Made by a program: the position numbers and the translations under genes. Below are positions 9,659 to 33,772 of a DNA stretch of 64,000 nucleotides, one piece after another (within the stretch, counting starts at the first letter, position 1; each line of letters starts with the position of its first letter). Below the pieces are notes generated by a model. That model made no database searches. It was not told where the DNA came from and saw only the letters and a list, made by a program, of their open reading frames with translations. The stretch lies in IMG/VR virus record IMGVR_UViG_3300049215_000771, positions 124,001 to 188,000 of that record, one strand, 5' to 3'.

Positions 9659-9666
9659 CTATATAC
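9659..9666. promoter_or_regulatory. late-promoter-like CTATATAC (palindromic TATATA, between divergent genes)
   Basis: 4 nt upstream of ATG 9671; similar TAnATA boxes precede other F-x-x-(F/W)-x2-4-E genes. Confidence 0.5.
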
Positions 9667-9670
9667 AATC

Positions 9671-10216
9671 ATGGAAACAATGACATTCCGCAACTTTCTG
9701 TTGGAACAGGAGAGCGAGCAACAAGCGCAGCAGCTACAGGCCAAGGTCAAGGAATTGAGCCAGCCGCAGACCGTCCAGCGCATGATACAGATGGTGGGGG
9801 CCAAAAACCTCGACGATCTGATTGCCAAATTGCGTGTCAACCCAAAGGTCCAGGCTGTTATTCAACAATATCAGCAACTCAAAGTAAATGAGGCATATTC
9901 AGAAGGGATGATGGGCACCATATTCGGGGGTATATGGAAAGCCCTCACTGGTGTATTTCGTTGGGCTTTATCGTCAATAGGAAAGACTATTGCTCATGTT
10001 TTTGCCCCTTTCGGCGATAGCAGTGAGGGTGTAGGAGCCAAGATGGAATACGCATCCATGTTGCTTCTTACCTTCGGGTTGTCGGGAACCCTTCTTGCTG
10101 CCGGGGCACCTGTAGCTGTCGCCGCAGCCGCTATGCCCTTTACAGCAACAATGTGGGGGTTGATGTGGTTCGGAAAGAACTTCCTGGAGCCTGTATTGAA
10201 AATGACAGATGGATAA
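9671..10216 (+). CDS. putative virion protein with CTS-like N-terminus and C-terminal hydrophobic helices
   Basis: Starts METMTFRNFLLEQ; no SD. Confidence 0.65.
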   Translation: METMTFRNFLLEQESEQQAQQLQAKVKELSQPQTVQRMIQMVGAKNLDDLIAKLRVNPKVQAVIQQYQQLKVNEAYSEGMMGTIFGGIWKALTGVFRWALSSIGKTIAHVFAPFGDSSEGVGAKMEYASMLLLTFGLSGTLLAAGAPVAVAAAAMPFTATMWGLMWFGKNFLEPVLKMTDG

Positions 10217-10261
10217 TTGTTTCATATTGATCGACAGCCCCGTATAGGATATACATTCAGT

Positions 10262-10543
10262 ATGCCCTATATGGAGGTTCCAGCCTTGTACTTGCCAGTT
10301 GTAAATCCCGATGTCGGAAAATCTGTCGCTATCGCCGTTGAGCGTAGCGGCGATCAGATGCGATATACTGAAGACCAACTTGAACGACTCGACGAAGAAA
10401 ATCCAGCCGTGGCTTGCTTCATTAGGGAGTGGGCCGAGCGTTCAGAGGAGCCTTTGAGCGCCGTTGGAATGGTCTGTTTGTATAGAATACTAGAGAGTCA
10501 GGCCGAGGCCGACGCCATGATGGAAGAAATTCCGATTGGCTAA
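10262..10543 (+). CDS. hypothetical protein
   Basis: ORF; start uncertain. Confidence 0.6.
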   Translation: MPYMEVPALYLPVVNPDVGKSVAIAVERSGDQMRYTEDQLERLDEENPAVACFIREWAERSEEPLSAVGMVCLYRILESQAEADAMMEEIPIG

Positions 10544-10621
10544 AATCCTGCGGGCGGATTGGTTGTTGATGCCGTAAATACGGCATGTAAAACAACAACT
10601 TTTTCGCTTGTAGGAGGCCAG

Positions 10622-11053
10622 ATGGACACGGTGGATGAGCGCACATTTGGAGAAAGGGTAAGCGATGCCGTCGCTAAATTTGGTGGTTCCTGGAGATTTA
10701 TCTTCATTGGCATTGGAATCATCATCTTCTGGATGGGTTTGCAACTCCTACCCTTCGCCTGGGATCATTACCCGTACATCCTCCTCAACCTTGTCCTGTC
10801 ACTCGTCGCCGCCTTCCAAGCACCATTCATTATGATGTCGCAGCGGCGTTGCGAAATTAAACAAGACCTGATCTACCGCAGCCTTTTCCGGGAGATCAAG
10901 GAACTGATCGAAACCGATCTCAGTGTGGAACAAGAAGTTGTGGCACAAAACAAGCTACTTGCCGAGGAACTGGCCTCGCTAAAGAAAATCGTCCAGGAGT
11001 TAGTGGAGGAGAGAAAATCCCAGGCACTTTACAACCAAGGGGAAATGAAGTAG
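10622..11053 (+). CDS. DUF1003 membrane protein
   Basis: RTFGERVSDAVAKFGGSWRFI...YPYILLNLVLSLVAAFQAPFIMMSQ signature; AGGAGG SD. Confidence 0.9.
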   Translation: MDTVDERTFGERVSDAVAKFGGSWRFIFIGIGIIIFWMGLQLLPFAWDHYPYILLNLVLSLVAAFQAPFIMMSQRRCEIKQDLIYRSLFREIKELIETDLSVEQEVVAQNKLLAEELASLKKIVQELVEERKSQALYNQGEMK

Positions 11054-11056
11054 GAT
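11028..11056 (+). promoter_or_regulatory. sigma70-type promoter
   Basis: TTTACA-N17-TAGGAT, 4 nt before ATG 11061. Confidence 0.6.
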
Positions 11057-11060
11057 AGAC

Positions 11061-11975
11061 ATGACGAAATACCGAGCCACGGCGACTGTGGTGTGGGACT
11101 TTGAGTCCGACAAGCCGCAAGACCAGGCTCTCGAACAGGCTAAGGCGCAAATCGAAGCGCTTCCTCCGCAGCAGGGCATGGCGGACCTTCGCATGGTGGT
11201 CCGCCTTGACAAGTTGAAAGAGAAGGTGCAGAAAGTTCGACTTGGTGAGTTCGAGATTGCCGACGTGATGCCTTATATCACCAAGGACGACACGAAACGT
11301 GAGTATGAATATAACGGCGTTAAGCACGCCGTCAAGATGAACAGCCATCGCTATTTCCTGTTCCGGGAATGTATGCAGTGTGTGGCTTGCGGCCTGAAAG
11401 GGACGAAGATGCTGCTTGAGCATCACCCGGCTGACAAGTCGCCTCACTTCAACCTTTACGGTGAGGAAGATGGCAAGTTGATCTTGCTCACGAAAGATCA
11501 TATTCTTGCGAAATCGTGTGGTGGGGAGGATCGCCACTCCAACTACCAAACGATGTGTATAATCTGCAACAATCTCAAAGGCCATGCGAATTTGACGCTC
11601 GATGCCATTGCGGAATTGCGGCAGATATATGACGAGAATAAGAATCGAGTAACGAAGAAGAAACTGCACTTGCTGATCGAGGAGGCAAAGACTAGACTGG
11701 CGAAGCCTTGGCCGAAGATCAAAACTCCCAAGAAAATCAAAGTAAGTGCCGACGCCGTTCATACCGCCTGCGACCTTAACGTATGGAGGAATGGGAACGA
11801 TCTTGTTGCTCGCCCTGTATATGATCCGCTGGATGCGGCTCAGGAGCATATTGCCTGTATTCGCAAGGGAGTATGCCTAGAACCATTGATCGCCATCGGC
11901 AGCAAGCTGGTGTGCAAGTTGGAAGATGACGTGTTCACTGTCAACCAGGTTCATGTCCTTCCTAGAAAGACGTGA
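11061..11975 (+). CDS. HNH endonuclease with N- and C-terminal extensions
   Basis: CVAC...HFNLY...TKDHILAKSCGG...NYQTMCIICNNLKG. Confidence 0.85.
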   Translation: MTKYRATATVVWDFESDKPQDQALEQAKAQIEALPPQQGMADLRMVVRLDKLKEKVQKVRLGEFEIADVMPYITKDDTKREYEYNGVKHAVKMNSHRYFLFRECMQCVACGLKGTKMLLEHHPADKSPHFNLYGEEDGKLILLTKDHILAKSCGGEDRHSNYQTMCIICNNLKGHANLTLDAIAELRQIYDENKNRVTKKKLHLLIEEAKTRLAKPWPKIKTPKKIKVSADAVHTACDLNVWRNGNDLVARPVYDPLDAAQEHIACIRKGVCLEPLIAIGSKLVCKLEDDVFTVNQVHVLPRKT

Positions 11976-11976
11976 A

Positions 11977-12504
11977 ATGCTTCAACTCGAAGACTTGTTC
12001 GTGATGCAGGACGATCTTCGTCACTGGAGCAACCTCGCAGAAATGGTTGAATACGTCCAGGGCGGCGGGTTCTGGACGCCCACCTATCTTGTCGAATTTG
12101 CTGCCAGCAAGGGCTTGAAGGTTTCTCCTATCATTCAAATTTCGCACTTCGAGGACGACTTCCACTACCTCCACGACGGCCATCATCGCTGTGTTGCTAC
12201 ATGGCTCGGCGGAAGAAATTACCTCCGTGAAGACGAGTACCGGCTGAAGGAATGGAAATACGATCAGTATCTCGAAATCAGTCACGCCAACGGCTGGTAC
12301 ACGCCATTTGATCCACGACTGCATGTAAGGACAGCAGACTTTGCCGATTTCAAACGTAAAGCCAAGGAGCGTTTCCTGGCGGACCCGGTGAAGGCCGAGA
12401 AATGGGTTCGAGATCATGGTCGATGTTACCGGCGTGACAGAACCTTCGGCGTGGTGCCTGAATTAGCATCGGCGATAAGTTGTCGCCTTGCCCTGAAAAC
12501 GTGA
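11977..12504 (+). CDS. ParB/Srx-like nuclease-domain protein
   Basis: YLHDGHHRCVA motif. Confidence 0.6.
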   Translation: MLQLEDLFVMQDDLRHWSNLAEMVEYVQGGGFWTPTYLVEFAASKGLKVSPIIQISHFEDDFHYLHDGHHRCVATWLGGRNYLREDEYRLKEWKYDQYLEISHANGWYTPFDPRLHVRTADFADFKRKAKERFLADPVKAEKWVRDHGRCYRRDRTFGVVPELASAISCRLALKT

Positions 12505-12515
12505 AGGAGTTCAAC

Positions 12516-13490
12516 ATGGGAGTCTACTCGAACGTGCTGGCCCCGCCCAATCCGGGCTTCTGGTTCGTGGTCGTCGTGGGCGCATTGCTCACGTTCGGCC
12601 CGATCATCATTACCCTCATCAAAGAAGCAAACGAACACTCCAGCTATGGGGAAAAGTCCAAAAAGCGTGACAAGAAGGGAGCCATTTCCCTGGGTCTGTT
12701 CAGCGCTATCGCCACCATCCTCCTGATTCACTTCTTCGGTGACAGCCGGGTGCTGGGCTGGGTGTACGACACGCCGGATCGCTCCGACCCCCAGGGATTA
12801 CAAGCCCTCATCGTCCCGTTCGGCGTCGTGTTCTGGATGTTCGTGGTGATCGAAACTGTTGTTGCCTTCTGTGCCCTTCGCTACCGCAGCGGCGGCTGGG
12901 CGACGGTTTCCCTCATCGTGACCATCTTCCTCGTCCAGTTCGTGACGGGCGTTCCTGTCATTCCCTGGATAATCCATCACTATATTCTCACGCCGGTTTT
13001 GTTCGGTCTGTGGGTCGTTGTTGGCGTGGCCTGGTCCTTCTTCTACAAGTGGGACAGCCTCGTGTCCAAACACCGTGAATGGTACGATCCCATCCGGGCG
13101 GATTGGCTGAAGTCGAAGGGCTTCAACGAGCAAACCGACTTCAGCCTCGAAGACAAGGCCGATTGGGAACTCTACTTTGAGAGCCACAAGGTTCGTGAAG
13201 ATGGCGAGGTAATCGAGGCCCGCCCGAAGTACCGTCATCACAAGGCCGAACTGCTGGGCTGGGCAACGCTGTGGCCTCTCAGCATGTTCGAGACGTTCCT
13301 GTACGACTGGCTGGCCCAAGTCTTCGTCAAGTTGTATCATCGGCTCGGCTCGGTCCTCAACTGGATCATGGCCCGTCGCTGGAAGGGCACGGAAGGGCAC
13401 ATGCTCACGCAGGAAGAGCGTGACATTCTCGCTCAGGAGCGTGCTAAGAAGGGCCAAGAAGAAATGCCAGACCTTCGGGGTCGCCGCTAA
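12516..13490 (+). CDS. polytopic membrane protein
   Basis: AAGGAG SD; several transmembrane segments. Confidence 0.75.
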   Translation: MGVYSNVLAPPNPGFWFVVVVGALLTFGPIIITLIKEANEHSSYGEKSKKRDKKGAISLGLFSAIATILLIHFFGDSRVLGWVYDTPDRSDPQGLQALIVPFGVVFWMFVVIETVVAFCALRYRSGGWATVSLIVTIFLVQFVTGVPVIPWIIHHYILTPVLFGLWVVVGVAWSFFYKWDSLVSKHREWYDPIRADWLKSKGFNEQTDFSLEDKADWELYFESHKVREDGEVIEARPKYRHHKAELLGWATLWPLSMFETFLYDWLAQVFVKLYHRLGSVLNWIMARRWKGTEGHMLTQEERDILAQERAKKGQEEMPDLRGRR

Positions 13491-13500
13491 CCACAAACAC

Positions 13501-13529
13501 ACCATCAGGCGCTCGCCCCGCCTGGTGGT
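13501..13529 (+). terminator. hairpin, possible terminator
   Basis: ACCATCAGGCG / CGCCTGGTGGT 11-bp stem, weak U-tract. Confidence 0.45.
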
Positions 13530-13543
13530 TTGAGGGTTTCGCC

Positions 13544-13768
13544 ATGACTACAATGCTTGCAGGTTTCTCGAACCAAAAAATGGCGCAAGATTTGTTGGGT
13601 GTTCTCCAACAAACCTTCCCACAAAATGAATTCGTCCTTGACGGGAACAGCATCGGCATCAAGGCCCATGAAGTCCTTTGTCTCCCCATCAAGAATTTCG
13701 TCCTGGGCTACACCCTGGGAATGCAGAAAGGCATGTCGGTGATGTTGCATGAACCTTCGACCAATTAA
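13544..13768 (+). CDS. hypothetical protein
   Basis: GAGG SD; fills gap before argS. Confidence 0.5.
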   Translation: MTTMLAGFSNQKMAQDLLGVLQQTFPQNEFVLDGNSIGIKAHEVLCLPIKNFVLGYTLGMQKGMSVMLHEPSTN

Positions 13769-15044
13769 CCCGGCTCACGGTGTCGGCTTCTACTCGATGG
13801 AACAACTGCCGCAGTTTGCTGGCAAGTACGTTGAGAAGAACGTGGGCCGCTATTGGAATTATCTTTTCACACCCACCAACTACGATTGGCCCGAACCGTG
13901 GCTGGAAGTGGCGAAAGATCATATCAACGCCGAGTACATCATTGACGGTTTTAGCCCAAACCTCAACAAATCCCTTCATGTTGGGCATCTACGCCAGCTT
14001 GCCCTCGCAAAAAGCCTGTCGGCTATCTTTCGCAAGGCGAAGTTTGTGGCCTTCCTTGGCGCAAGCCTGGGTGTCTACAGCTATGCCATGAAGGAACTCA
14101 ACGAGTGGTTTGAGTTTGTTGGTTATAAGCCGGAACTCTACTACGACGTGCTGATGCCCCGTGACCTGGTGGAACATCACAAAGTCATCGAACACGAAGC
14201 CCATGTGTGGGATGGTCCCAATGGGCCGGTGATCGTTGTTCGCAGCGATGGTCGCCCTACCTACGCCTTCCACGATCTTGCCTTTGCCAAGATGGTCGGC
14301 CCCACTCATTACATCACTGGAGCCGAGCAGAAGGAACATTTCGAGCGCCTGGGCCTGGGTGACAAGCATCTCATCATGGGGCTTGTGCTGGGCAAAGATG
14401 GCAAGAAGATGAAGTCTCGTGAGAGTGATCTTGAAGATGCCAAGGCTGCTGCTGTCATGGATGAAATCATCAGCAAGCTGGACGATTCCTGTACCGAGAA
14501 GAAGAAATTGGCCTGGAACATCCTGGCCTGGAACTTTCTCGTGGCCGGTCGCCAGCAAAACGTCAAGTACAACCTGGAGGAATGGACCAACCCGGATCAG
14601 GCTGGCCTCTACATCACCTACACCTATGCCCGTGTTCGCAAGGCGTTGAAGGGCATTGAGTGGGCGCACATTCCTCCCGCCAACATGAAAGCCATCAAGA
14701 AGCACTTCCAGTGGGATGGGCTGGGCGCAGAACATTGGGATGAGGCGTGTGAGAAGTGGTCCCCAACCGACCCGGACCCGCAGTACGATCTCACCCAGGC
14801 TGATGTTGACCTGTTGGGTTTCTCGGAATACTACCGCTACTATCTGAAGCGTTGCACCGACACAATGGACCCGACGCATATGGCCAACTACGCCCACGAC
14901 CTGGCACGTCGCCTGGGCAAAGCCTACCACGCCGAGAAGATTCAGGGCGGTCGCTACGGGTTCCAATACGCTATGGAGCGAGCGAAAAGTATGCTTCGCC
15001 AGTGCATGTGGTATTTGGGCATGTTCGATTTGGAGCAGGTTTAA
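13749..15044 (+). CDS. argS: shortened arginyl-tRNA synthetase (class Ia)
   Basis: FSPNLNKSLHVGHLR (HIGH), RSDGRPTYAFHDLA, GAEQKEHF, GKKMKSRE (KMSKS), GLYITYTYAR (DALR domain). Confidence 0.85.
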   Translation: MNLRPINPAHGVGFYSMEQLPQFAGKYVEKNVGRYWNYLFTPTNYDWPEPWLEVAKDHINAEYIIDGFSPNLNKSLHVGHLRQLALAKSLSAIFRKAKFVAFLGASLGVYSYAMKELNEWFEFVGYKPELYYDVLMPRDLVEHHKVIEHEAHVWDGPNGPVIVVRSDGRPTYAFHDLAFAKMVGPTHYITGAEQKEHFERLGLGDKHLIMGLVLGKDGKKMKSRESDLEDAKAAAVMDEIISKLDDSCTEKKKLAWNILAWNFLVAGRQQNVKYNLEEWTNPDQAGLYITYTYARVRKALKGIEWAHIPPANMKAIKKHFQWDGLGAEHWDEACEKWSPTDPDPQYDLTQADVDLLGFSEYYRYYLKRCTDTMDPTHMANYAHDLARRLGKAYHAEKIQGGRYGFQYAMERAKSMLRQCMWYLGMFDLEQV

Positions 15045-15053
15045 GGAGTTGAA

Positions 15054-15419
15054 ATGAACGAGGAAGTTCAGTACGGCGATCATTCTGTCTCGATGAGGGT
15101 GAACATTAACCAACTCATCGCCAAGATGCAAGCGCCGAAGCCGGATGGTATCAGTTTCATCATGCGAAGCGATGGAACCTTCACTGCCATCTGCAAGCGT
15201 GACCAGATGAAGTTGTTGACCGGAAACACGACTTACGGCGATACCGATCTCATCTGGCATCGTTGTCCCAAGTGTGAGAGGGTTTCTTTCAGCGTCAGAC
15301 AGAACCTCGAACGGGATGCTCAGATCGCCGAGAGCATGGGTGGTATCTTCCCATCGGAATGCTACTTCATGAACCTGCCTGATGAAATTCCTCGCCCCGC
15401 TGAATGGAGAATGATATGA
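15054..15419 (+). CDS. hypothetical protein (CxxC)
   Basis: AAGGAG SD. Confidence 0.7.
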   Translation: MNEEVQYGDHSVSMRVNINQLIAKMQAPKPDGISFIMRSDGTFTAICKRDQMKLLTGNTTYGDTDLIWHRCPKCERVSFSVRQNLERDAQIAESMGGIFPSECYFMNLPDEIPRPAEWRMI

Positions 15420-15910
15420 TCGAACTCAAATGCCCCAATGAATGGAACCCGGCCTTGGTTGCCCAGCGTGGCTATGGGAACTTGTGGGATGTCGGCTCGT
15501 TGTTCCTGGGCGGCGGCATCACAAGCTGCCCGCAGTGGCAGCCTATTATGGTGGACTTGTTGAAAGACACTGAACTGGTTCTTGTCAACCCTCGCCGTGA
15601 TAACTTCGACGTGACGCAGAAAGGCATCCAGGAAGAACAGATCAGTTGGGAGTACAAATACCTTCGGGCTGTGACCGGGCGAATGTTCTGGTTCCCGAAG
15701 GAAACTTTGTGCCCCATCACGTTGTTCGAGTTGGGCAAGTACATCGAAAAAACCGATGCCTTGTTCGTTGGCTGTGACATCGACTACGGGCGGCGTGAAG
15801 ATTTGTTGATTCAGATGGGCCTGGCTCGACCCTGGGCACCACAAGTTCACTACACACTCGACGGCCTGGCTGAATCCATCAGGAATTGGGCAAAAAGAGT
15901 GTGTAGATAA
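15404..15910 (+). CDS. nucleoside 2-deoxyribosyltransferase-like protein
   Basis: SLFLGGGITSCPQWQ...VNPRR...QISWE...FWFPKETLCPITLFELG. Confidence 0.85.
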   Translation: MENDMIELKCPNEWNPALVAQRGYGNLWDVGSLFLGGGITSCPQWQPIMVDLLKDTELVLVNPRRDNFDVTQKGIQEEQISWEYKYLRAVTGRMFWFPKETLCPITLFELGKYIEKTDALFVGCDIDYGRREDLLIQMGLARPWAPQVHYTLDGLAESIRNWAKRVCR

Positions 15911-16008
15911 AATCTCACCAGACTACTATAACGGCACAGGAACACTTCTTGTGCCGTTTTTGTTTCCAGAGTTCTATATACCACGGAAGCCTTTTCAAAG
16001 GAGTGGCC

Positions 16009-16647: not shown

Positions 16648-16649
16648 CA

Positions 16650-17444: not shown

Positions 17445-17445
17445 T

Positions 17446-19298: not shown

Positions 19299-19757
19299 TC
19301 ATATTTGTGCTTTTGTAGCACCAACCCCTGCGGCCTCCCGCTCGCCCGAATGGTCGCCCAGGGCTGGCTTTATCAGATTGTAGTCAGTATCCATCAGTTC
19401 GGCCCGCTCGAACCAGTAATCTGGTACTTGCGGGTAGCCTGTTGCTTTTGCTTTCTCTTCAAACATTACCTGCGCAGGCGGGTGTCCGCCATGATACACA
19501 AGGTATTGAGCCGGGACTCCATGCCCCGGCAACTTCGCAATGAACTTCGAGAAGTTGCCGAACCGATTGAATGGCGGGTCATAAGGTGGCGGTCCCTCGA
19601 ATCGCATGTCGATAGCGCCAATAATACCATCCTTACATGGCAAACCAGGGACACGAATCATGCCACAGGGCACCGCAGCCTTCTCTTGTGGAGGCACAGA
19701 AAAACTCGCCATCTCTGCGAGAATCAACCATTCTCGAAAATTCATCGAAGTCTTCAT
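19299..19757 (-). CDS. putative virion internal protein with CTS-like N-terminus
   Basis: MKTSMNFREWLILAE; GTACATAC box 4 nt upstream, no SD. Confidence 0.6.
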   Translation of the reverse strand: MKTSMNFREWLILAEMASFSVPPQEKAAVPCGMIRVPGLPCKDGIIGAIDMRFEGPPPYDPPFNRFGNFSKFIAKLPGHGVPAQYLVYHGGHPPAQVMFEEKAKATGYPQVPDYWFERAELMDTDYNLIKPALGDHSGEREAAGVGATKAQI

Positions 19758-19839
19758 GTCGGTATGTACTGGTAATAGTTACAGAAAACCATCACCCTCT
19801 CTCTAAATAATGGACCTTACCCCTAATAACTGAGGCTTG

Positions 19840-25150: not shown

Positions 25151-25151
25151 C

Positions 25152-25180: not shown

Positions 25181-25185
25181 TGGGT

Positions 25186-25944: not shown

Positions 25945-26021
25945 GGTTGCCTCCGTTGTCGTATCGTCCAGGCGTCTGTTCTCACTTAACTGTGCTACGG
26001 CGGTTTTGTCCGGTTTTTTCC

Positions 26022-26047
26022 GAACCCAAGCAAAAAATCCCGGTCTT
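26022..26047 (+). promoter_or_regulatory. class-II promoter (GAACC-N16-GTCTT)
   Basis: Ten-copy motif. Confidence 0.75.
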
Positions 26048-26080
26048 CCTGACGTAACAAAGGCACACAGGAGATAAGAC

Positions 26081-26686: not shown

Positions 26687-26695
26687 AAAGTTTCC

Positions 26696-26721
26696 GAACC
26701 TCGCCCGCCCAGCGAGGTCTT
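26696..26721 (+). promoter_or_regulatory. class-II promoter (GAACC-N16-GTCTT)
   Basis: Ten-copy motif. Confidence 0.75.
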
Positions 26722-26759
26722 CTATGCGGAGATCGAACAACCCATAAGGGAGCAGAACA

Positions 26760-27590
26760 ATGGCTCATCTGACCAAGGAATTCGTGACCGCTGGCCGGGC
26801 TGTCTTCACCCTCGAAGTCCCGGACACCTTCAAGACCAAGTACGAGGCCGACCACCGTGGCGCTGTGGTCAAGCCGCACTACACCTTCCGTGTCAACTTC
26901 AAGAAGGGCGAGGGCAACTACAAGGACACCTACTTCCTCCAGTTGCTCACCGGCCCCGACAACACCCGTTCCTACAGCTACCTGGGCATTCTCAACAAGG
27001 ACGAGGGGACGATCCGCCTCACGGCCAAGTCGTGCCGGGGCGAGGGCGATGTCGCCGTCCTGCTGGTTCGCCGGGCACTGGCCCGTGTGTGGCGCAACGA
27101 AGTCGCCGAGATCGAGAAGGCCGGCTTCCAACTGCACCACGAGGGTCGCTGTGGGCGCTGTGGGCGGGCGCTGACCGTCCCGGAGTCCATCGAGTGTGGC
27201 ATCGGCCCGGAGTGCATCAAGCAGATGGGCGGGGGCAACTACCCCCACCTGGTCGCCCAGGACGAGATCGACAAGGCCGAGGCTCGTCGGGAGCAGGCCG
27301 GGGCTGTCATCAAGCCCAACAACCTGAAGGATGCCGCTGCCGAGGCGATGGAACTGGCACGCCTTCAGAAGAAGGGGCTTCTGAGTGACGACGACCTGGA
27401 ACTGGAGCGGGCCATCGCCGAGTCCGAGGCGGCTGATGCCCGTGATGATTTCGAGGACGAGGAGCCGGAACCCGACGAGCCGGACCCCGCCAACGAAGCA
27501 GAAGATCGTGCCCTCCTGGGCATCTACCGGGGCAATCACGACCTGTTCGGGCGTCGGCCTGGCTATGGTCCCTACAGCGAGGGGTACTAA
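26760..27590 (+). CDS. DUF6011-domain protein
   Basis: HEGRCGRCGRALTVPESIECGIGPEC; N-terminal LLTGPDN...YSYLG domain; acidic tail. Confidence 0.8.
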   Translation: MAHLTKEFVTAGRAVFTLEVPDTFKTKYEADHRGAVVKPHYTFRVNFKKGEGNYKDTYFLQLLTGPDNTRSYSYLGILNKDEGTIRLTAKSCRGEGDVAVLLVRRALARVWRNEVAEIEKAGFQLHHEGRCGRCGRALTVPESIECGIGPECIKQMGGGNYPHLVAQDEIDKAEARREQAGAVIKPNNLKDAAAEAMELARLQKKGLLSDDDLELERAIAESEAADARDDFEDEEPEPDEPDPANEAEDRALLGIYRGNHDLFGRRPGYGPYSEGY

Positions 27591-27769
27591 TGTCGGAAGA
27601 AAGCCGCAAACGCCTGATGGAAGAGATCGCAGGGCGGGCCGAAAACTTGGCCCGCCTTATGAGGGAGCCACAAGAAGGTTTGGCGTCCTGGTCTGACCTG
27701 GTTGCCGAGAACGCCAGGTTTCTTTCTGACTGGTGGGGCGGGAAGTTCGCCGGGAAGGAATTTCCATGA
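27590..27769 (+). CDS. small hypothetical protein (59 aa)
   Basis: Read by hand (MSEESRKRLMEEI...); TAATG and ATGA coupling at both ends. Confidence 0.6.
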   Translation: MSEESRKRLMEEIAGRAENLARLMREPQEGLASWSDLVAENARFLSDWWGGKFAGKEFP

Positions 27770-28080
27770 GCATGGCCAAACGAGCGCTCGACGAAGCGCT
27801 GTGTCGTCAATATCCTGAACCACCGGAGGATTTCATGCTTTTTCGCAATTTGCCAACTGACAAGTTTGCTGTGATCTTCCGTGATCCCAACGGTGGGACG
27901 TGGACTGTGACCAGCAACTACGACACGCCCGAACGGGCGCTGGAGGCGCAGGAAGCCTTCAAGAAGAACTACAACACCGAGGCTTACGCCGTCAACCTTC
28001 GCCTGCTGATCGAGAACGTCCCCAGCTTCGTTCTCAGCCAGGTGGAGCGGTCAGTGCAACCCGCAAAGGAACCAACATGA
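27766..28080 (+). CDS. hypothetical protein
   Basis: Coupled ORF. Confidence 0.65.
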   Translation: MSMAKRALDEALCRQYPEPPEDFMLFRNLPTDKFAVIFRDPNGGTWTVTSNYDTPERALEAQEAFKKNYNTEAYAVNLRLLIENVPSFVLSQVERSVQPAKEPT

Positions 28081-28322
28081 CCTTCGAGTACACCCTGAAG
28101 CGTGAAGGTGGCGAAATCGAAGTCACCGTCCACGGTGATTACCATCGTGCCAGTCGTGGCTACCGGGACAGCCTGGGCGTCCCGGAAGAGCCTGACGAGC
28201 CTTCCTGTTTCGAGATCGACACCGTGACCGACTCCGATGGGAACGAAGTGGAAGTTTCCGACCACGAACTCGACATCCTGGCCGAGCGGGGCGTGGCTGT
28301 GTGTGAGAGCGGCTGGGATTAA
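28077..28322 (+). CDS. acidic hypothetical protein
   Basis: AAGGA SD, ATGA coupling. Confidence 0.7.
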   Translation: MTFEYTLKREGGEIEVTVHGDYHRASRGYRDSLGVPEEPDEPSCFEIDTVTDSDGNEVEVSDHELDILAERGVAVCESGWD

Positions 28323-28335
28323 CGAGGATTCCTTC

Positions 28336-28590
28336 ATGTTCGTCGCAGAGTATTGGTGGCTGTTCTTGATCCTTGGTGTTGTGTTCGTCGGCATGGCTTT
28401 CTACCGGCAGGTTCGGGCCATGAACGACTTGACAGGCGGCAACACCTTCGACCCTCGACTGGAGGGCAAGGCTGACCCACGGGGCGGCTTCTTCGCCGGG
28501 TTCGCCTTGACCGCAGTGCTGGCCCTCCTGGGAGCTATCGGATTGCTCTTGGGTTTCATCGGGCTGATTGTTACACTGGTGAGAGGATAA
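28336..28590 (+). CDS. two-TM membrane protein
   Basis: GAGG SD; two hydrophobic helices. Confidence 0.7.
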   Translation: MFVAEYWWLFLILGVVFVGMAFYRQVRAMNDLTGGNTFDPRLEGKADPRGGFFAGFALTAVLALLGAIGLLLGFIGLIVTLVRG

Positions 28591-28596
28591 AATTCC

Positions 28597-28623
28597 GAAC
28601 CGGGGGACCGCCAACCCGGTCTT
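28597..28623 (+). promoter_or_regulatory. class-II promoter (GAACC-N17-GTCTT)
   Basis: Ten-copy motif. Confidence 0.7.
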
Positions 28624-28665
28624 TCTTGCGAAGCGTTTGAAACCTGACCATGAAGGGAGATTACC

Positions 28666-28899
28666 ATGAGGGATGAATCGTTCGTCCGCAAGCCGTATCA
28701 GGCCACTGACTTCGCCGCTGCTGTGGCCCAGGTGAATCGCCAGCGCTGCCAGCGTTGTGAGGGCAAGGTCCGGTTCAATAACCAGACCAGCAAGCCCGAC
28801 AACGAAGGTATCGTGACGCTGGCCGGCATCTGCACCGAATGCCATCAGACCCACAGCATCATCTTCAACATCAACAACTTCGTGGTCCGGGAAGTCTAA
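28666..28899 (+). CDS. zinc-ribbon protein
   Basis: CQRC...CTEC; GGGAG SD. Confidence 0.7.
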   Translation: MRDESFVRKPYQATDFAAAVAQVNRQRCQRCEGKVRFNNQTSKPDNEGIVTLAGICTECHQTHSIIFNINNFVVREV

Positions 28900-28901
28900 C
28901 T

Positions 28902-29120
28902 ATGAATGAAGAAGTCGTCATCAACCTGCCCGTCGATCAGGCCAAGCTGCTTGTTGTCAGCATCCGGGCGGCGGCGGCACTGAGCCGCAATCACCGGCAC
29001 AACAAGCAGGCTGATGAATTCAGCGAATTGGCTGACATCATCCAGCGCCAGGTGGATGACCACGAAGAAGCAGAAGCGTTCGATGATCCCGGCGAGAATC
29101 GAACCTTCCTGGACGATTAA
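28902..29120 (+). CDS. hypothetical protein
   Basis: Coupled ORF. Confidence 0.65.
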   Translation: MNEEVVINLPVDQAKLLVVSIRAAAALSRNHRHNKQADEFSELADIIQRQVDDHEEAEAFDDPGENRTFLDD

Positions 29121-29122
29121 CC

Positions 29123-29971
29123 ATGAGCAGGATCAAGCAAACGAGCGACGTAATCGGCAACGCCATGAGGGAGGGGACTCCCCCGTGGCGTATGCCGTTT
29201 GTTGCCCACAAAAACAGCGGATTCCCCACCAACGCCTATACAAACCGGCAATATGGTGGTATAAATCCATTACTGCTCAATATCGCCGCCCTCAAGAATG
29301 GACACACCAGCAAGTATTGGGCGACGTACAAGCAGTGGGCCGGCATGGGCTGCCAGGTCAAGCGCCGTCCCGACGACGTGCCAGAAGGCGAATGGGCTGC
29401 CAAGATTGTCCGCCGAACCTACAACGAGGAAGATGACAAGGTTTCGTGGTCGCCGATCTTGGTTTTCAACGCCTCCCAGGTGTTTGGAAATTTCCATGTC
29501 GTTCCGGCGACGGCGTACCAGGTGTTGAAGGCAGAGATTTCCGACACCCCACCTGACTATAGTAACACGGATCGTTTGCTGGCCCAGGCGGTTTTCAAGG
29601 AAGGTGGCTACAGCAGGCCACGCTACGAGCGCCCGCCCAAAGACTTCATCTGTATGCCTTGGCGGAAGCGGTTTGTTGATGATGCTCACTGGTATGGTTC
29701 GTGTCTGCATGAGCTAATCCATTGGGCTGAATGGCGCACGGGATGGAAAGGCAGTGAAGAACAAGGCGAATTGATCGCTGAGATCGGCCAGGCGTATCTG
29801 GAAACACTTCTCGGCGTGCCGCATTGCAACGACTTGACCAACTACAACAAATGGTTGGACGACTGGCTCCGGGCGATGGACGAAGACCCACGATACATCT
29901 ACGAAGCCACCGCACAGGCCGAAAAAGCAGTCGATTTTGTCATGGGTCGTCGCCCCAACCGTGACGAATAG
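29123..29971 (+). CDS. ardC: ArdC-family antirestriction / ssDNA-binding protein
   Basis: TPPWRMPF...PTN...YGGINPLLL...WATYKQW...G..V N-domain plus zincin LHELIHW...GELIAEIG. Confidence 0.85.
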   Translation: MSRIKQTSDVIGNAMREGTPPWRMPFVAHKNSGFPTNAYTNRQYGGINPLLLNIAALKNGHTSKYWATYKQWAGMGCQVKRRPDDVPEGEWAAKIVRRTYNEEDDKVSWSPILVFNASQVFGNFHVVPATAYQVLKAEISDTPPDYSNTDRLLAQAVFKEGGYSRPRYERPPKDFICMPWRKRFVDDAHWYGSCLHELIHWAEWRTGWKGSEEQGELIAEIGQAYLETLLGVPHCNDLTNYNKWLDDWLRAMDEDPRYIYEATAQAEKAVDFVMGRRPNRDE

Positions 29972-29991
29972 GCTGGGGCAGGAGGAATATC

Positions 29992-30378
29992 ATGTGCCTG
30001 AAATGCACACACGCTCACCTGGAACAACTCCGGTGGGAACTTCTGATCCAAGAACACGAACTCCAGGGCATCAAGCCCAGCCCGGAAATCATCGACACGG
30101 TGAAGGATCGCATCAAGGAAAGCGGCGGCAAGGCCATGTTGCCTCGCATCAAGTTGCAGCGCACGGATGACATGAACGACCAGCAGTACGGCGAAGCAGT
30201 CTATCTGTTCAAGGAAGGAATGCTACAGCGCCGACGCATGGAAATCATGGCAATCGACATCGTACAAAACCTCCTGACCAGTGAGGTTTTCCAACCCTAT
30301 CAGGTTCTCACCGTGCCGGCCAACGTCGTCCTCAACGGCGATGACGACGAAACCGACTCCATCGGAGATTCACCATGA
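29992..30378 (+). CDS. hypothetical protein
   Basis: AGGAGG SD. Confidence 0.7.
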   Translation: MCLKCTHAHLEQLRWELLIQEHELQGIKPSPEIIDTVKDRIKESGGKAMLPRIKLQRTDDMNDQQYGEAVYLFKEGMLQRRRMEIMAIDIVQNLLTSEVFQPYQVLTVPANVVLNGDDDETDSIGDSP

Positions 30379-30644
30379 TCCGGTTTCTTGCAGTGCTGGT
30401 GTTGGCCCTCGTCGCCTCGACAGCGCAGGCTCAATACCCGAATCCCTACAACCCGTATTACCACCCGAACGCCTACTACTACCAACGGCTGGCCCAGCAG
30501 CGACAACTGGCGGTCCAGCAATGGAATTACCGCCAGGCAATTGCCCAACAGCGAGCCTATCAGAACTGGCTGGCCCAGCAGCGGTTCTACGGCTACCAGA
30601 ACTTCCTCGCCCAGCGGCGACTCATGATGCTGGGCCACCCGTAA
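30375..30644 (+). CDS. secreted Q/Y/N-rich low-complexity protein
   Basis: Signal peptide ending AQA, then YxxQ/AQQR repeats. Confidence 0.7.
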   Translation: MIRFLAVLVLALVASTAQAQYPNPYNPYYHPNAYYYQRLAQQRQLAVQQWNYRQAIAQQRAYQNWLAQQRFYGYQNFLAQRRLMMLGHP

Positions 30645-30663
30645 ATCCAACAAGGGAGAAGCG

Positions 30664-31164
30664 ATGGATATTGCCGAGCATCCTATCTTCGATGAAGTCC
30701 TCAAAGCCTACGCCGATTGTGGGCCTGTGGACGAGCAATTCGAGCGTGGCGAGGGCGATACCAGCCTCAGCGATGAGGCCAGGTTTGAAGCCCTGGTCGA
30801 TGAGGCCATGACGCATCGCAACCTTTCCTTCCGGGCCAGCCAAGCGGTTGACCCAAAAACAGCACAAGCCATCATGGAGAAGGCTTGTCCGGGCTATAAC
30901 GCCTTCAGGCCGAAGTTCCTGGGCCTGCTCCCGGATGATTGCCAGGTGACGCTGGCCCGTGAAGGAAGTGTGTGCATCTACGTCAGGCCGGGCAAGTCGA
31001 AAATTCCCACCAGGAGCAAGCTGAAGGCTGACGAGTACAGCGTGTTGAAGGAAGACACTTTCGCCATTGGCTATCACAAGGGCGACCCCAGCCGGGCCGG
31101 TTGTGACCACGGCAGCACGGATTACGGCGGCTACAAGGGCGAAATTCGCATCTGGTGGGACTAA
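30664..31164 (+). CDS. hypothetical protein
   Basis: GGGAG SD. Confidence 0.75.
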   Translation: MDIAEHPIFDEVLKAYADCGPVDEQFERGEGDTSLSDEARFEALVDEAMTHRNLSFRASQAVDPKTAQAIMEKACPGYNAFRPKFLGLLPDDCQVTLAREGSVCIYVRPGKSKIPTRSKLKADEYSVLKEDTFAIGYHKGDPSRAGCDHGSTDYGGYKGEIRIWWD

Positions 31165-31169
31165 TTTCC

Positions 31170-31195
31170 GAACCTTACACCTTCATGGCGGTCTT
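31170..31195 (+). promoter_or_regulatory. class-II promoter (GAACC-N16-GTCTT)
   Basis: Ten-copy motif. Confidence 0.75.
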
Positions 31196-31216
31196 CCTGG
31201 TAGAAGGGAGATTACC

Positions 31217-31441
31217 ATGAAGGTTCGTGTTGGTTCCAAGTACGTTTACAACCCGGCAGGGTTCGACATTTTCGACCCCAAGTGCCACATCGAGCCGGGA
31301 ACCATCGTCAAAGTCGGCAATCTGCCGAGCGCCCCACCCGCAAACACAATGGGTCAGTGCTACGTTTTCGACGTGGCAAGTGGCAAGTTCATCGGCATGG
31401 TTTCGACGGCCAGCCTCACGCCAGCCCCGAAGGGAAAGTGA
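31217..31441 (+). CDS. hypothetical protein
   Basis: GGGAG SD. Confidence 0.7.
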   Translation: MKVRVGSKYVYNPAGFDIFDPKCHIEPGTIVKVGNLPSAPPANTMGQCYVFDVASGKFIGMVSTASLTPAPKGK

Positions 31442-31881
31442 TGAAACTTACTCTGCTGCAACAGAAGAACAGGCCGATCCACAAGCTACGGCCTCGTGGC
31501 AAGTCGGTGGTCGCATTCACCTACTGTGGCGTGGAACCCTGTCGCAAGGGCGTCCGCACCGAGGGTGTGAACGTCGGCCAGATGAAGGCCACCTGCAAAC
31601 ACTGCCTCGCTATCGAGGCGAAGGAGAAACCCAAGATGAAAGTTACACTCGCTGGCCCGGACGACCTGGGCGTGTGGGTGTTGCACGATGAGAACGGCAA
31701 CGCCTTCGAGATCGTCAACGACCCCCACAACTTCGTGTCGCAAGTCCTCAAGGCCGCTTCGTTGTTCGGCTACAAGGGCAACGACCCCGACGCCGCCCTG
31801 GGCGTGTTGATGGAAAACCGTGGTGAAGAAATCGACGCCCCGGCTGATGCCGAGGCGTACTTCAAGGAACTGGACGAGTAA
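31441..31881 (+). CDS. hypothetical protein
   Basis: TGATG-coupled ORF. Confidence 0.7.
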   Translation: MKLTLLQQKNRPIHKLRPRGKSVVAFTYCGVEPCRKGVRTEGVNVGQMKATCKHCLAIEAKEKPKMKVTLAGPDDLGVWVLHDENGNAFEIVNDPHNFVSQVLKAASLFGYKGNDPDAALGVLMENRGEEIDAPADAEAYFKELDE

Positions 31882-33336
31882 TTACGCCACACCGCCGAAG
31901 AGATCGGGCTGCATGGCCGCTTGCCTTGCAGCCCTTGCTTTTTTGCCACCCCCACCAGCAAGCCTCGACTTGATGATCGACTTGATATGTTCGGGGTCCA
32001 CTTCTCCACCAGAAACAGCCGGGCCGAAATAGTGTAGAGATGTAGGTTCGTGGCCCAAGTTCTGGTCCAAGCGCTTGCCCCTATCATCTGTACGGAACGC
32101 AACGGCTCTCGCTGCGTCCGATCCTCGCTTGCCCTGCCTGTAGATTTGATGGAATTGCTTCAAAGCATCATCCGGGTCCATTGGCAAGTGCGTGGCCGAT
32201 GCACCCATGCCGAGCCTGCCCTGGGCCAGCGGGACCATCACGCCGCCCTTGTCCTTGCCGATACCGACCTTTGGAATGGATTTGCCTTGCAGGGCATCGT
32301 ATTCAGGAGCCTTGGGGTCCAAAGCGCCGCCCTGGAAGTCGTAGTAACCCTTGCCATGCGATGTAATCATAACGTACATCGTTTCAACAAAGTCTACCCA
32401 TACATCCCATAGCTGCTGGGTGCCGATTCCACGACTCTTCAGTTTGTCGAGTGTGGCGACATATTTCTCAGCGCCGCCCTTCTTCCGGCCCCACTGTTTC
32501 TCCTCGAAATCGCCAGCTTTGTCCATGTCCGGGAATACTTTGGAATAAATGTCGATGTTGTGCGTGTCAATACACCCAGCACGGCCCCACAACAATTGAG
32601 CAATAAAACCAGCCTTGACCGGCTGCACACCTTTAATTTGTGACAAACGCTTGATGATTTGTACGTCATCGCCGCCTTTCGCCAGACCATTCAATTCGTG
32701 GAACAATCCTTCCTTGTTGGACCAAATATCAGCAATCGTGTCCAGCTTGAAGCCGCCGATGGAGTGGGCCAGGGCGTGATATTTGTCGCCGAATGAATCT
32801 ACGGCATGTTCGAGTTCTTGCCTAGTGACTTTGTTGGGGTAATAGTGCTTCAATATCGCCATCAATGCTTGATAATTGTCCCAATGCTTGGCGAAGGGCA
32901 CGTTGGCCGAGAGGGGGCTGAACATCAAAACCTGAGCAAAGTTTTGAGGCGAGGACTTGGCGAACGCTTGAATTGCACCGATATGGTTGGCATATCCCGA
33001 CAAAGGAGTAACAGCGCAGGAATCCCCACCCTTCATTGGTTGCCCATCAGGACCGAGGACTTGTGGTCCGCCACGTTTCTCTAGGCCGGGTTTCTCCGAG
33101 GAGATGAAGCGGTCGAGTTTGCCGGCTGGGTCTTCGCCAACTTCTACGTCGCCGAACAAGGTTTTATCTACTTTCGGCTTGTAGGTGAAGTCGGAGCCGG
33201 CCAGTTTCCTACGGTCTTTACGACCCTCGCTGACAGGTTCATCATTCAGCCATGCAGATACCTCAGTCATCACAGAAGATAGAACATATCCGCTGTACGC
33301 TTCGTCCAGGTCTACGAATTCTTTGAAATTGCTCAT
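31882..33336 (-). CDS. HhH-GPD/Ogg-like DNA glycosylase-fold protein with CTS-like N-terminus (484 aa)
   Basis: LSQIKGVQPVKAGFIAQLLWGRAGCIDTHNI keeps the helix-hairpin-helix, catalytic-position Lys and Asp; starts MSNFKEFVDLDE. Confidence 0.6.
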   Translation of the reverse strand: MSNFKEFVDLDEAYSGYVLSSVMTEVSAWLNDEPVSEGRKDRRKLAGSDFTYKPKVDKTLFGDVEVGEDPAGKLDRFISSEKPGLEKRGGPQVLGPDGQPMKGGDSCAVTPLSGYANHIGAIQAFAKSSPQNFAQVLMFSPLSANVPFAKHWDNYQALMAILKHYYPNKVTRQELEHAVDSFGDKYHALAHSIGGFKLDTIADIWSNKEGLFHELNGLAKGGDDVQIIKRLSQIKGVQPVKAGFIAQLLWGRAGCIDTHNIDIYSKVFPDMDKAGDFEEKQWGRKKGGAEKYVATLDKLKSRGIGTQQLWDVWVDFVETMYVMITSHGKGYYDFQGGALDPKAPEYDALQGKSIPKVGIGKDKGGVMVPLAQGRLGMGASATHLPMDPDDALKQFHQIYRQGKRGSDAARAVAFRTDDRGKRLDQNLGHEPTSLHYFGPAVSGGEVDPEHIKSIIKSRLAGGGGKKARAARQAAMQPDLFGGVA

Positions 33337-33340
33337 GTTG

Positions 33341-33757
33341 TTATTTAGCCAGCACTGCGGCAATCTCCTTTGCAACATATGGAACAAATTGGTAATGGTT
33401 TAATTCTGATTTCGACACCCAGGCGAAAGCATCATTTTCATGGTCCAGTCGTGGTGTTTTCTGGTTAGCCCGGCCAGTGAATAAGTACAAGGTGAAGGAA
33501 GGATCGCTGATTTTCTTATGGAATTTGATGTCGGCGGGAGCGATTCCTGTTTCTTCCATACATTCTCGTCTCATTGCTTCCTGTGGGTTTTCTCCTTCAT
33601 CTATCAAGCCGCCTGGTAAATTCCAAGCACCAGGCATCCAGGGCGCACTCATGCCACGGCGAAGGATTAGGGCTTTTCCTTCATCATTGACGATGATTAT
33701 GGCGGCGGTTGGGTGGGGTTCAGTCGCCTCCAGCCATTCTCTAAAACTGCTTGTCAT
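33341..33757 (-). CDS. NUDIX hydrolase with CTS-like N-terminus
   Basis: Nudix box GLIDEGENPQEAMRRECMEETGI preceded by WNLPGG; starts MTSSFREWLE. Confidence 0.92.
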   Translation of the reverse strand: MTSSFREWLEATEPHPTAAIIIVNDEGKALILRRGMSAPWMPGAWNLPGGLIDEGENPQEAMRRECMEETGIAPADIKFHKKISDPSFTLYLFTGRANQKTPRLDHENDAFAWVSKSELNHYQFVPYVAKEIAAVLAK

Positions 33758-33772
33758 GGTTGATTATCTAGC

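What the first reader, a model, noticed from the sequence alone, without database searches (positions are those of the whole stretch)
9659..33771. Capsid-targeting-like N-termini plus leaderless late-type promoters mark a set of probably virion-packaged proteins
Four ORFs start with F-x-x-(F/W)-x2-4-E: MTFRNFLLE (9671), MKTSMNFREWLILAE (19757, minus), MSNFKEFVDLDE (33336, minus) and MTSSFREWLE (33757, minus). Each has a (C/G)TAnATA(A/C) box only 4-6 nt upstream of the ATG and no SD: CTATATAC 9659-66, GTACATAC 19762-69, CTAAATAA 33341-48, CTAGATAA 33764-71. T4 internal proteins carry the capsid-targeting sequence MKTYQEFIAE, cleaved after Glu by the prohead protease, and T4 late promoters are TATAAATA (established). 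Inference: these proteins are made late from leaderless mRNAs, packaged in the head and injected at the next infection.
Basis: partly seen in the sequence, partly recalled or inferred. Interest (0 to 1): 0.62.

Follow-up and report, generated by a model that had tools for sequence, protein, structure and literature searches.

The report
Capsid-targeting tags on leaderless late genes
A half-megabase relative of phage T4 puts a short T4-like "pack me into the head" peptide on about thirty unrelated proteins, nearly all made from promoters that sit directly against the start codon. This suggests, but does not prove, that it ships a large kit of enzymes into the next host along with its DNA.

Summary
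The window lies in a 532,729-bp uncultured T4-superfamily phage from a moss metagenome. The phage encodes a gp21-type prohead protease, a putative gp22-like scaffold gene, a gp23-type capsid protein and a gp55-like small sigma factor.

About 31 proteins genome-wide start with M-x(0-7)-F-x-x-[W/F/Y]-[L/I/V/M]-x(0-5)-E, against 2.7 expected. Of these, 24 have a TAnATA box 3-7 nt (mostly 5) before the ATG and no Shine-Dalgarno sequence.

The box, usually CTAnATA, matches T4/Aeh1-type late promoters. T4 geometry puts the transcript start on the A of the ATG. A second promoter class of sigma-70 type has 52 sites and never precedes a tagged protein.

Both tag and box are conserved in a 595-kb relative, in IMG/VR orthologues and in most of 95 metagenomic homologues. 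In those homologues the tag ends in E followed by A, G or S.

The tags sit on unrelated domains: Nudix, an HhH-GPD DNA glycosylase fold, dTMP kinase, a NIF/HAD phosphatase, a C39 peptidase and many orphans.

Best reading: T4-like capsid-targeting propeptides on late-expressed cargo. Packaging, cleavage, timing and the leaderless start are all inferred. Leaderless starts are also not special to these genes.

The parts
9659..9666 (+). CTATATAC late-type promoter box. The TAnATA core is 9660-9665, 5 nt before the ATG at 9671.
   Evidence: It belongs to the position-locked TAnATA-N5-ATG class.
9671..10216 (+). 181-aa orphan protein that starts METMTFRNFLLE (tag, then Glu).
   Evidence: Tag score 13.5 bits. 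No Pfam hit and only one weak PHROG hit (phrog_19282, E 0.0084). No IMG/VR relatives.
19762..19769 (-). GTACATAC box. The TAnATA core is 19768-19763, 5 nt before the ATG at 19757.
19299..19757 (-). 152-aa orphan protein that starts MKTSMNFREWLILAE.
   Evidence: Tag score 16.5 bits. No family, Atlas or IMG/VR relative.
33341..33348 (-). CTAAATAA box. The core is 33347-33342, 5 nt before the ATG at 33336. It overlaps the TAA stop of the Nudix gene.
31882..33336 (-). 484-aa protein that starts MSNFKEFVDLDE. The tag is followed by an HhH-GPD (Ogg2/EndoIII-like) DNA glycosylase fold at about residues 108-383. Lys241 and Asp257 are invariant.
   Evidence: 95 homologues, 72 of which keep the tag. P1 is Glu in 50 of 54, and P1' is A/G/S in 51 of 54. 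AF2 model pLDDT 89. Foldseek hit 3fhg with probability 1.0. VIA Z 12.3, 189 of 207 residues aligned to 3knt_A. Invariant columns.
33764..33771 (-). CTAGATAA box. The core is 33770-33765, 7 nt before the ATG at 33757.
33341..33757 (-). 138-aa Nudix hydrolase that starts MTSSFREWLE. The tag precedes the Nudix domain, which begins at residue 14.
   Evidence: Pfam NUDIX E 1.1e-21, residues 14-125. Tag score 16.5 bits. The Nudix homologue in the 595-kb relative lacks the tag.

Best explanation
The N-terminal F-x-x-[W/F]-[L/I/V/M]...E peptides are capsid-targeting propeptides of the T4 kind.

Proposed mechanism:
1. They dock otherwise unrelated proteins onto the prohead core of this giant T4-superfamily phage.
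2. The gp21-type prohead protease removes them by cutting after the Glu.
3. The cargo stays in the head and enters the next host with the DNA.

The genes are transcribed from gp55-type late promoters (CTAnATA). These sit so close to the ATG that the mRNA starts at, or within 2 nt of, the start codon. That explains the missing Shine-Dalgarno sequence. Promoter, ATG and tag together form a compact unit of about 50 bp that can turn any gene into late-made head cargo.

Shown by sequence: the motif, its enrichment, its coupling to the box, its conservation in relatives, and the presence of the protease, capsid and sigma genes.

Inferred: the timing, the transcript start, cleavage, packaging and injection.
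For: - Tag enrichment is 31 observed against 2.7 expected, using a matrix trained on foreign homologues. Of the 31, 24 are box genes.
- Box versus tag gives an odds ratio of 149, p 1.5e-17.
- None of 52 sigma-70-type promoters precedes a tag.
- T4 ipI, ipII and ipIII, read from NC_000866, start MKTFKEF and MKTYQEFIAE. ipI scores in the top 0.9% of the null.
- The genome has a Peptidase_S77 protease (E 4e-29), a Gp23-like capsid protein (E 1e-86) and a putative scaffold gene between them. One tagged gene lies beside the portal.
- The capsid protein's own N-terminal region carries L-x-E sites before the conserved mature core.
- In the 484-aa family, P1 is Glu in 50 of 54 and P1' is A/G/S in 51 of 54.
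- Tags precede unrelated Pfam domains as extra N-terminal extensions: Nudix, thymidylate kinase, NIF phosphatase, C39 peptidase and DUF3293.
- The box matches the T4 TATAAATA (-13 to -6) and Aeh1 CTAAATA (from -12) late promoters (PMC1524935).
- A gp55-like sigma factor is present.
- The box also precedes the large terminase, a head-tail adaptor and the tail sheath. It dominates the 300-450 kb structural region, where sigma-70-type sites are nearly absent.
- Orthologues in LR756511.1 and in IMG/VR contigs keep both tag and box.
- T-even internal proteins are established as diverse cargo that share only the targeting sequence (PMC3012670, PMC5694885).
Against: - There are no virion, cleavage or transcript-start data.
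- Several tagged proteins are nucleotide-metabolism enzymes (dTMP kinase, HAD/NIF phosphatase). Their use as injected cargo is not obvious.
- P3 is L/I/V in only 24 of 54 homologues, so the site is not a strict T4 (L/I)-x-E site.
- T4 ipII and ipIII score poorly on the family matrix because they have Tyr where the family has Phe. The T4 Alt N-terminus does not match at all.
- The box class also drives a DnaB-like helicase and an SbcC-like nuclease, which are early or middle genes in T4.
- Leaderless geometry is shared with 13-16 sigma-70-type promoters, so it is a habit of the genome or its host, not a mark of cargo.
- The arrangement was not found in two cultured, more distant relatives.
Confidence: 0.6

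Rival explanations
1. The peptide is a real, portable N-terminal tag, but it serves some other late function. It could recruit proteins to another phage-built complex or compartment, or act as a stability or degradation signal. It would then have no role in capsid loading or proteolytic removal.
For: Several tagged proteins are metabolic enzymes (dTMP kinase, NIF/HAD phosphatase, Nudix) that usually act in the infected cell. P3 does not follow the T4 rule. How T4 targeting sequences are recognised is itself unresolved (PMC9958956).
Against: The tag resembles T4 ipI/II/III and sits in a genome with the full T4 head-maturation set. The tag ends in a conserved Glu plus a small residue, as cleavage sites do. 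One tagged gene lies beside the portal-protease-capsid cluster. No other system with such a tag is known.
Confidence: 0.2
2. The box is a phage-specific promoter, but it is not a strictly late one. It could be a middle or constitutive class. The tagged proteins would then be made before head assembly and would act in the current infection.
For: Box genes include a DnaB-like helicase and an SbcC-like nuclease. The third position of the box is degenerate, unlike T4. A weak A/T-rich element lies 15-20 nt upstream of the box.
Against: The box matches the Aeh1/T4 late core and geometry. A gp55-like sigma factor is encoded. The terminase, adaptor, sheath and portal region all use the box, and sigma-70-type sites are nearly absent from the 300-450 kb structural region.
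Confidence: 0.12
3. The shared N-terminus is a nucleotide-level requirement of leaderless initiation, such as a promoter downstream element or a translation enhancer. It could also be shared ancestry of paralogues. In either case it is not a protein signal.
For: The motif is tightly linked to leaderless box promoters.
Against: The Phe sits anywhere from residue 2 to 8. Synonymous codons vary: Arg as AGA, CGA or CGC, Phe as TTT or TTC, Leu as CTG or TTG. Half of the leaderless box genes and all leaderless sigma-70-type genes lack the motif. Some tagged genes have leaders with a Shine-Dalgarno sequence (genome 335083, and IMG/VR locus L095). The proteins carry unrelated domains.
Confidence: 0.05

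Closest known systems
T4 capsid-targeting sequence (CTS) of internal proteins IPI, IPII, IPIII and Alt (Mullaney and Black 1996; reviewed in PMC3012670, PMC5694885, PMC9958956)
   Same: Both are N-terminal peptides of 10-15 residues with an aromatic-x-acidic-aromatic-aliphatic core that end in Glu. Both are attached to otherwise unrelated proteins. Both occur in a phage with a gp21-type protease, a gp22-like scaffold candidate and a gp23-type shell. Both go with late-type promoters.
   Different: This phage has about 31 tagged proteins, against a handful in T4. Phe and Trp are preferred where T4 has Tyr and Phe. The spacer to the Glu is longer and variable. P3 is not strictly Leu or Ile. The cargo includes recognisable enzymes. 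The genes are leaderless, whereas the T4 ip genes have Shine-Dalgarno leaders.
gp55-dependent late promoters of T4-like phages (TATAAATA at -13 to -6; Aeh1 CTAAATA from -12; PMC1524935)
   Same: The core is TA-A-ATA preceded by C. There is no -35 hexamer. A small sigma factor with region 2 only is encoded. The box lies upstream of the terminase, adaptor, sheath and portal region.
   Different: The third core position is free (A, T, C or G). Roughly a third of the sites abut the start codon, so the transcript would have no leader. The box is also found before a helicase and a nuclease gene.
Long propeptides of ejection proteins in phiKZ, 201phi2-1 and SPN3US giant phages (PMC5694885)
   Same: These are giant heads that carry many internal or ejected proteins. 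A related protease processes those proteins after Glu.
   Different: Those propeptides are mostly over 100 residues long and share no short motif. Their cleavage motif is (S/A/G)-x-E or A-x-E. Those phages lack a T4-type scaffold.
Leaderless mRNAs (lambda cI; common in Actinobacteria and Deinococcus; PMC4633059)
   Same: The -10-like element lies 4-7 nt before an ATG, there is no Shine-Dalgarno sequence, and the start codon is ATG.
   Different: Here the arrangement is used by a phage with two promoter classes, and it is coupled in one class to a protein-sorting tag.

Membership tests
T4-type capsid-targeting propeptide (CTS) | Short N-terminal peptide with the conserved aromatic/acidic/aliphatic pattern of T4 IPs | tested here: met
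   The pattern is shared with T4 ipI (MKTFKEF) and ipII/III (MKTYQEFIAE), read from NC_000866. ipI scores in the top 0.9% of the null. ipII/III do not stand out on the Phe-fixed matrix. This is a pattern-level match, not proven homology.
T4-type capsid-targeting propeptide (CTS) | Ends at a Glu that a gp21-type prohead protease cleaves | tested here: inconclusive
   A Peptidase_S77 gene is present. Glu is conserved at P1 (50 of 54) with A/G/S at P1' (51 of 54). P3 is L/I/V in only 24 of 54. Cleavage itself cannot be tested here.
T4-type capsid-targeting propeptide (CTS) | Attached to otherwise unrelated cargo proteins | tested here: met
   Nudix, thymidylate kinase, NIF phosphatase, C39 peptidase, DUF3293, an HhH-GPD fold and many orphans.
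T4-type capsid-targeting propeptide (CTS) | Sufficient to load a protein into the prohead; cargo found in virions and ejected | not testable with these tools
gp55-type late promoter | TATAAATA/CTAAATA-like element ending at -6, with no -35 hexamer | tested here: met
   The consensus is gC-TAnATA. There is no TTGACA-like element, only a weak A/T-rich patch 15-20 nt upstream. It is enriched in non-coding DNA: 160 of 339 sites lie in 14% of the genome.
gp55-type late promoter | Phage encodes a gp55-like sigma factor | tested here: met
   A 179-aa ORF at genome 413426-413965(-) matches phrog_234 (E 3.5e-8) and Pfam Sigma70_r2 (31.4 bits, cut-off 24). A single T4 gp55 sequence found nothing.
gp55-type late promoter | Drives late (structural) genes and is active only after replication | tested here: inconclusive
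   The box precedes the large terminase, the Ad2 adaptor, the tail sheath and the portal region. It also precedes a DnaB-like helicase and an SbcC-like nuclease. Timing cannot be tested here.
Leaderless mRNA | Transcript starts at or within a few nt of an AUG; no Shine-Dalgarno sequence | tested here: inconclusive
   The geometry (5 nt from box to ATG) and T4 spacing place +1 on the A. Only 6 of 36 box genes have a Shine-Dalgarno-like sequence, against 421 of 706 others. RNA-library contigs gave no 5' ends.

The most novel reading that the evidence does not exclude
A clade of huge T4-related phages uses a compact promoter-ATG-tag cassette to load thirty or more different proteins into the capsid. 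The cargo includes a DNA glycosylase, a Nudix hydrolase, a nucleotide kinase, a phosphatase, a cysteine peptidase and SAM-lyase-like proteins. On this reading the phage injects a ready-made enzymatic and counter-defence toolkit before any phage gene is expressed.
Probability: 0.45. Interest if true: 0.75.

Novelty: new variant of a known kind. Interest (0 to 1): 0.6.

Why it matters
How T4 sorts proteins into the prohead core is still called mysterious (PMC9958956). In T4 the targeting sequence is known from only a few proteins.

This clade offers hundreds of natural variants of a T4-like tag with a clear core, F-[K/R]-[E/D]-W-[L/I/V]. That gives a usable logo for finding the receptor and for engineering cargo loading.

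If the tagged proteins are packaged, giant phages would carry an injected proteome far larger and more enzymatic than that of T-even phages. This bears on how they survive the first minutes against host defences.

The tag-plus-box rule is also a practical annotation tool. It fixes start codons and flags candidate virion cargo in uncultured huge-phage genomes.

Tried and rejected
- DNA searches of the window against GenBank phages found nothing.
- A single-sequence search with T4 gp55 found nothing. The PHROG profile did. phrog_12791 found nothing.
- PHROGs gave at most weak hits (E 0.0035-0.0084) to families of unknown function for two of ten tagged orphans, and nothing for the other eight. 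The Atlas gave nothing for the 152-aa protein.
- The 181-aa and 152-aa proteins have no IMG/VR relatives by this method. The Nudix protein has only a weak one.
- I asked whether tagged genes turn over faster than other genes. They do not clearly do so: 9 of 37 have a hit in the 595-kb relative, and two of those nine queries (the Acb1-like protein and the primase) were later dropped as false tags. Among all genes, 28% have a hit.
- I asked whether ATG is used exclusively after the box. This was uninformative, because ATG is 89% of all starts anyway.
- The generic E. coli-consensus promoter scan showed no enrichment (9 against 11.2). A genome-specific pattern, TTTACA-N16-18-TAnnAT, revealed the real sigma-70-type class.
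- Two motif candidates were dropped as false positives after comparing orthologues: a 2H/Acb1-like protein at genome 315569 and a primase at 311287.
- Stenotrophomonas phage RAS14 and Microcystis phage Mel-JY01 show no box-ATG peak.
It gave no verdict.
- RNA-library contigs cover parts of the 484-aa gene but give no ends, strand or timing.
- The box-like site at window 10575-10587 is a hairpin followed by ATG-TAA, not a gene.


Full report
**What the window is.** The window is bases 124,001-188,000 of a single 532,729-bp IMG/VR virus record with 52.7% G+C. DNA holding it comes from moss metagenomes. An identical copy of one of its proteins sits on a 673-kb contig, so the genome may be larger than the record.

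The genome is T4-like in its head genes. It has a Peptidase_S77 (gp21-type) prohead protease (E 4e-29) and a Gp23-type major capsid protein (E 1e-86). They lie in the order portal candidate, protease, scaffold candidate, capsid at genome 335,258-340,279. The portal and scaffold labels rest on gene order only; the 649-aa portal candidate had no PHROG hit. The nearest public genome is the 595-kb uncultured phage LR756511.1, whose capsid protein is 81% identical. Cultured T4-like phages are at most 44% identical.

**The observation.**
- The ATG at 9671 encodes METMTFRNFLLE. The quoted peptide begins at the second ATG.
- The TAnATA cores lie 5, 5, 5 and 7 nt before the ATGs.
- The box at 33341-33348 contains the stop codon of the Nudix gene.
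- None of the four has a Shine-Dalgarno sequence in range, although most genes of this phage have a clear GGAG-type one.

**Genome-wide scale of the box.** TAnATA followed by ATG peaks sharply at a spacing of 5 nt. There are 37 sites, 32 of which open coding ORFs, against 7.3 +/- 2.5 for spacings of 10-40 nt. The box is usually preceded by C, giving gC-TAnATA. It is concentrated in non-coding DNA: 160 of 339 copies lie in 14% of the sequence.

**Genome-wide scale of the tag.** I trained a five-position matrix only on homologues from other genomes. It finds 31 N-termini at 8 bits or more, against 2.7 expected from internal Met positions. There is a clean gap below that score, and 24 of the 31 are box genes.

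On a crude set of 742 gene calls:
- box against tag gives an odds ratio of 149 (p 1.5e-17);
- box against Shine-Dalgarno gives 0.14 (p 3e-7).

**A protein signal, not a nucleotide one.** The Phe sits at residue 2 to 8. Synonymous codons and K/R or W/F exchanges vary freely.

**What carries the tag.** The tag sits in front of unrelated domains as an extra N-terminal extension:
- Nudix (window 33757; the domain starts at residue 14);
- thymidylate kinase, and a NIF/HAD phosphatase transcribed divergently from it;
- a C39-like cysteine peptidase;
- two DUF3293/SAM-lyase-like proteins;
- a small helix-turn-helix protein.

Most of the others are orphans.

The 484-aa protein of the window belongs to a family of 95 metagenomic proteins. 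With their alignment AlphaFold2 gives pLDDT 89. Residues 108-383 match archaeal Ogg2-type HhH-GPD DNA glycosylases:
- Foldseek probability 1.0 to 3fhg;
- VIA Z 12.3 at 3.1 A over 189 of 207 residues of 3knt_A.

The Lys and Asp of the HhH-GPD signature (K241, D257) are invariant. The Atlas search pointed the same way.

**Conservation.**
- In LR756511.1 (42% G+C) the same TAnATA-N4/5-ATG arrangement precedes about 22 proteins that start with the same tag.
- Six orthologous pairs between the two genomes keep both tag and box at about 30-57% identity.
- In 21 IMG/VR loci of two tagged families, 17 keep a TAnATA 4-6 nt before the ATG and 19 keep the tag. One has the box followed by a leader with AAGGAG, which shows that the box is the promoter and that the leaderless form is optional.
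- In the 484-aa family 72 of 95 members keep the tag.
- Where the register can be anchored, the residue before the mature part is Glu in 50 of 54. The next residue is A, G or S in 51 of 54. P3 is L/I/V in only 24 of 54.

**Promoter classes.** K-mer enrichment upstream of genes revealed a second promoter type, TTTACA-N16-18-TAnnAT. This is a sigma-70-type promoter.
- It has 52 sites, mostly at 0-200 kb on the + strand and at 450-500 kb on the - strand.
- It precedes a tRNA-like sequence and an aminoacyl-tRNA-synthetase-like gene, among others.
- None of the 52 precedes a tagged protein.
- In 13-16 of them the start codon lies 4-7 nt after the -10 hexamer. Leaderless starts are therefore a general habit of this phage and presumably of its host.

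Box-type sites dominate the 300-450 kb region, which holds the head and tail genes and almost no sigma-70-type sites. Box genes without a tag include:
- the large terminase, a head-tail adaptor and the tail sheath (the sheath box lies 74 nt upstream);
- a DnaB-like helicase and an SbcC-like nuclease.

A 179-aa ORF matches the PHROG for the T4 late sigma factor (E 3.5e-8). It has only sigma region 2 (31 bits), as gp55 does.

Published work places the T4 late element TATAAATA at -13 to -6, and the Aeh1 variant CTAAATA starts at -12 (PMC1524935). With that geometry, a 5-nt gap puts +1 on the A of the ATG.

**Comparison with T4.** Read from the T4 record, ipII and ipIII start MKTYQEFIAE, ipI starts MKTFKEF and Alt starts MELITELFDE. 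All have Shine-Dalgarno leaders. The tag here shares the aromatic-x-acidic-aromatic-aliphatic...Glu pattern. On the family matrix ipI is in the top 0.9% of the null. ipII/III are not, because they have Tyr where Phe is fixed in the family.

Reviews state that T-even internal proteins are diverse defence-related cargo. They share only the targeting sequence, which gp21 removes after Glu (PMC3012670, PMC5694885).

**Conclusion.** These are T4-like capsid-targeting propeptides on late-made cargo, here expanded to about thirty proteins and fused to promoters that leave no leader. I put this at 0.6.

The main reservations are these:
- there is no virion or 5'-end evidence;
- dTMP kinase and a phosphatase are odd choices of cargo;
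- the P3 position is loose;
- the box class includes replication and recombination genes.

Three of the four window genes point against the surrounding + strand genes that carry sigma-70-type promoters. That orientation fits late genes embedded in an early region.

Noticed in passing
window 34597-34890 (+); also genome 18168, 36957, 58396, 122561, 238201(-), 351337, 351573, 453780, 518024, 518241, 518474: Twelve small ORFs carry a shared motif, (K)KKYRSIDDPW; in eleven it lies 2-6 residues before the stop, and in the ORF at genome 18168 it lies near the N-terminus. The window copy is a 97-aa protein with a hydrophobic N-terminus and Cys pairs. The purpose is unknown. The motif was not found in LR756511.1 with the same pattern.
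   Followed up: partly
genome 58147-58311, 351363-351485, 453534-453695, 475584-475757(-), 517823-517981, 518357-518440, 524427-524744; protease copy at 238229-238600(-): Dispersed short ORFs are diverged copies (36-78% identity) of successive pieces of the phage's own major capsid protein: residues 1-58, 45-102, 257-310, 307-415, 316-368, 400-440 and 436-463. There is also a partial copy of the prohead protease, and an ORF that resembles the portal's C-terminal repeats. Several of these carry the KKYRSIDDPW tail. LR756511.1 also has capsid-fragment ORFs and a second protease copy. They might be decoys for capsid-sensing defences or assembly regulators; this is unexplained.
   Followed up: partly
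window 4614, 11028, 20018, 25152, 33969, 38129, 41262, 48907, 55814, 58995 (all +): Sigma-70-type promoters with a tight phage-specific consensus, cTTTACAa-N16-18-gGTAnnAT. There are 52 in the genome, presumably early. The one at window 11028 abuts the ATG at 11061 (TAGGAT, 4 nt, ATG), so leaderless starts also occur in this class.
   Followed up: yes
genome 7961 and 49050 (outside the window): Sigma-70-type promoters precede a tRNA-like sequence and a class I aminoacyl-tRNA-synthetase-like gene with a HIGH-type motif near its N-terminus. This is typical of huge phages that carry translation genes.
   Followed up: no
whole record: IMG/VR labels the 532,729-bp record 'provirus', yet a protein identical to the 484-aa one is recorded on a 673,178-bp contig. 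The true genome may be larger, and the provirus call may be an artefact of trimming.
   Followed up: no
window 30286-30704, 31496-31652, 32066-33190, 34271-34429, 34688-34985: Short contigs from three moss or plant metatranscriptome libraries match these stretches exactly, including parts of the 484-aa tagged gene. This is compatible with transcription in nature. DNA carry-over is not excluded, and no ends or strand can be read.
   Followed up: partly
genome 346338-347809: A tagged NIF/HAD phosphatase and a tagged thymidylate kinase are transcribed divergently from a 35-bp spacer. The spacer holds two back-to-back boxes, each 5-7 nt from its ATG.
   Followed up: partly
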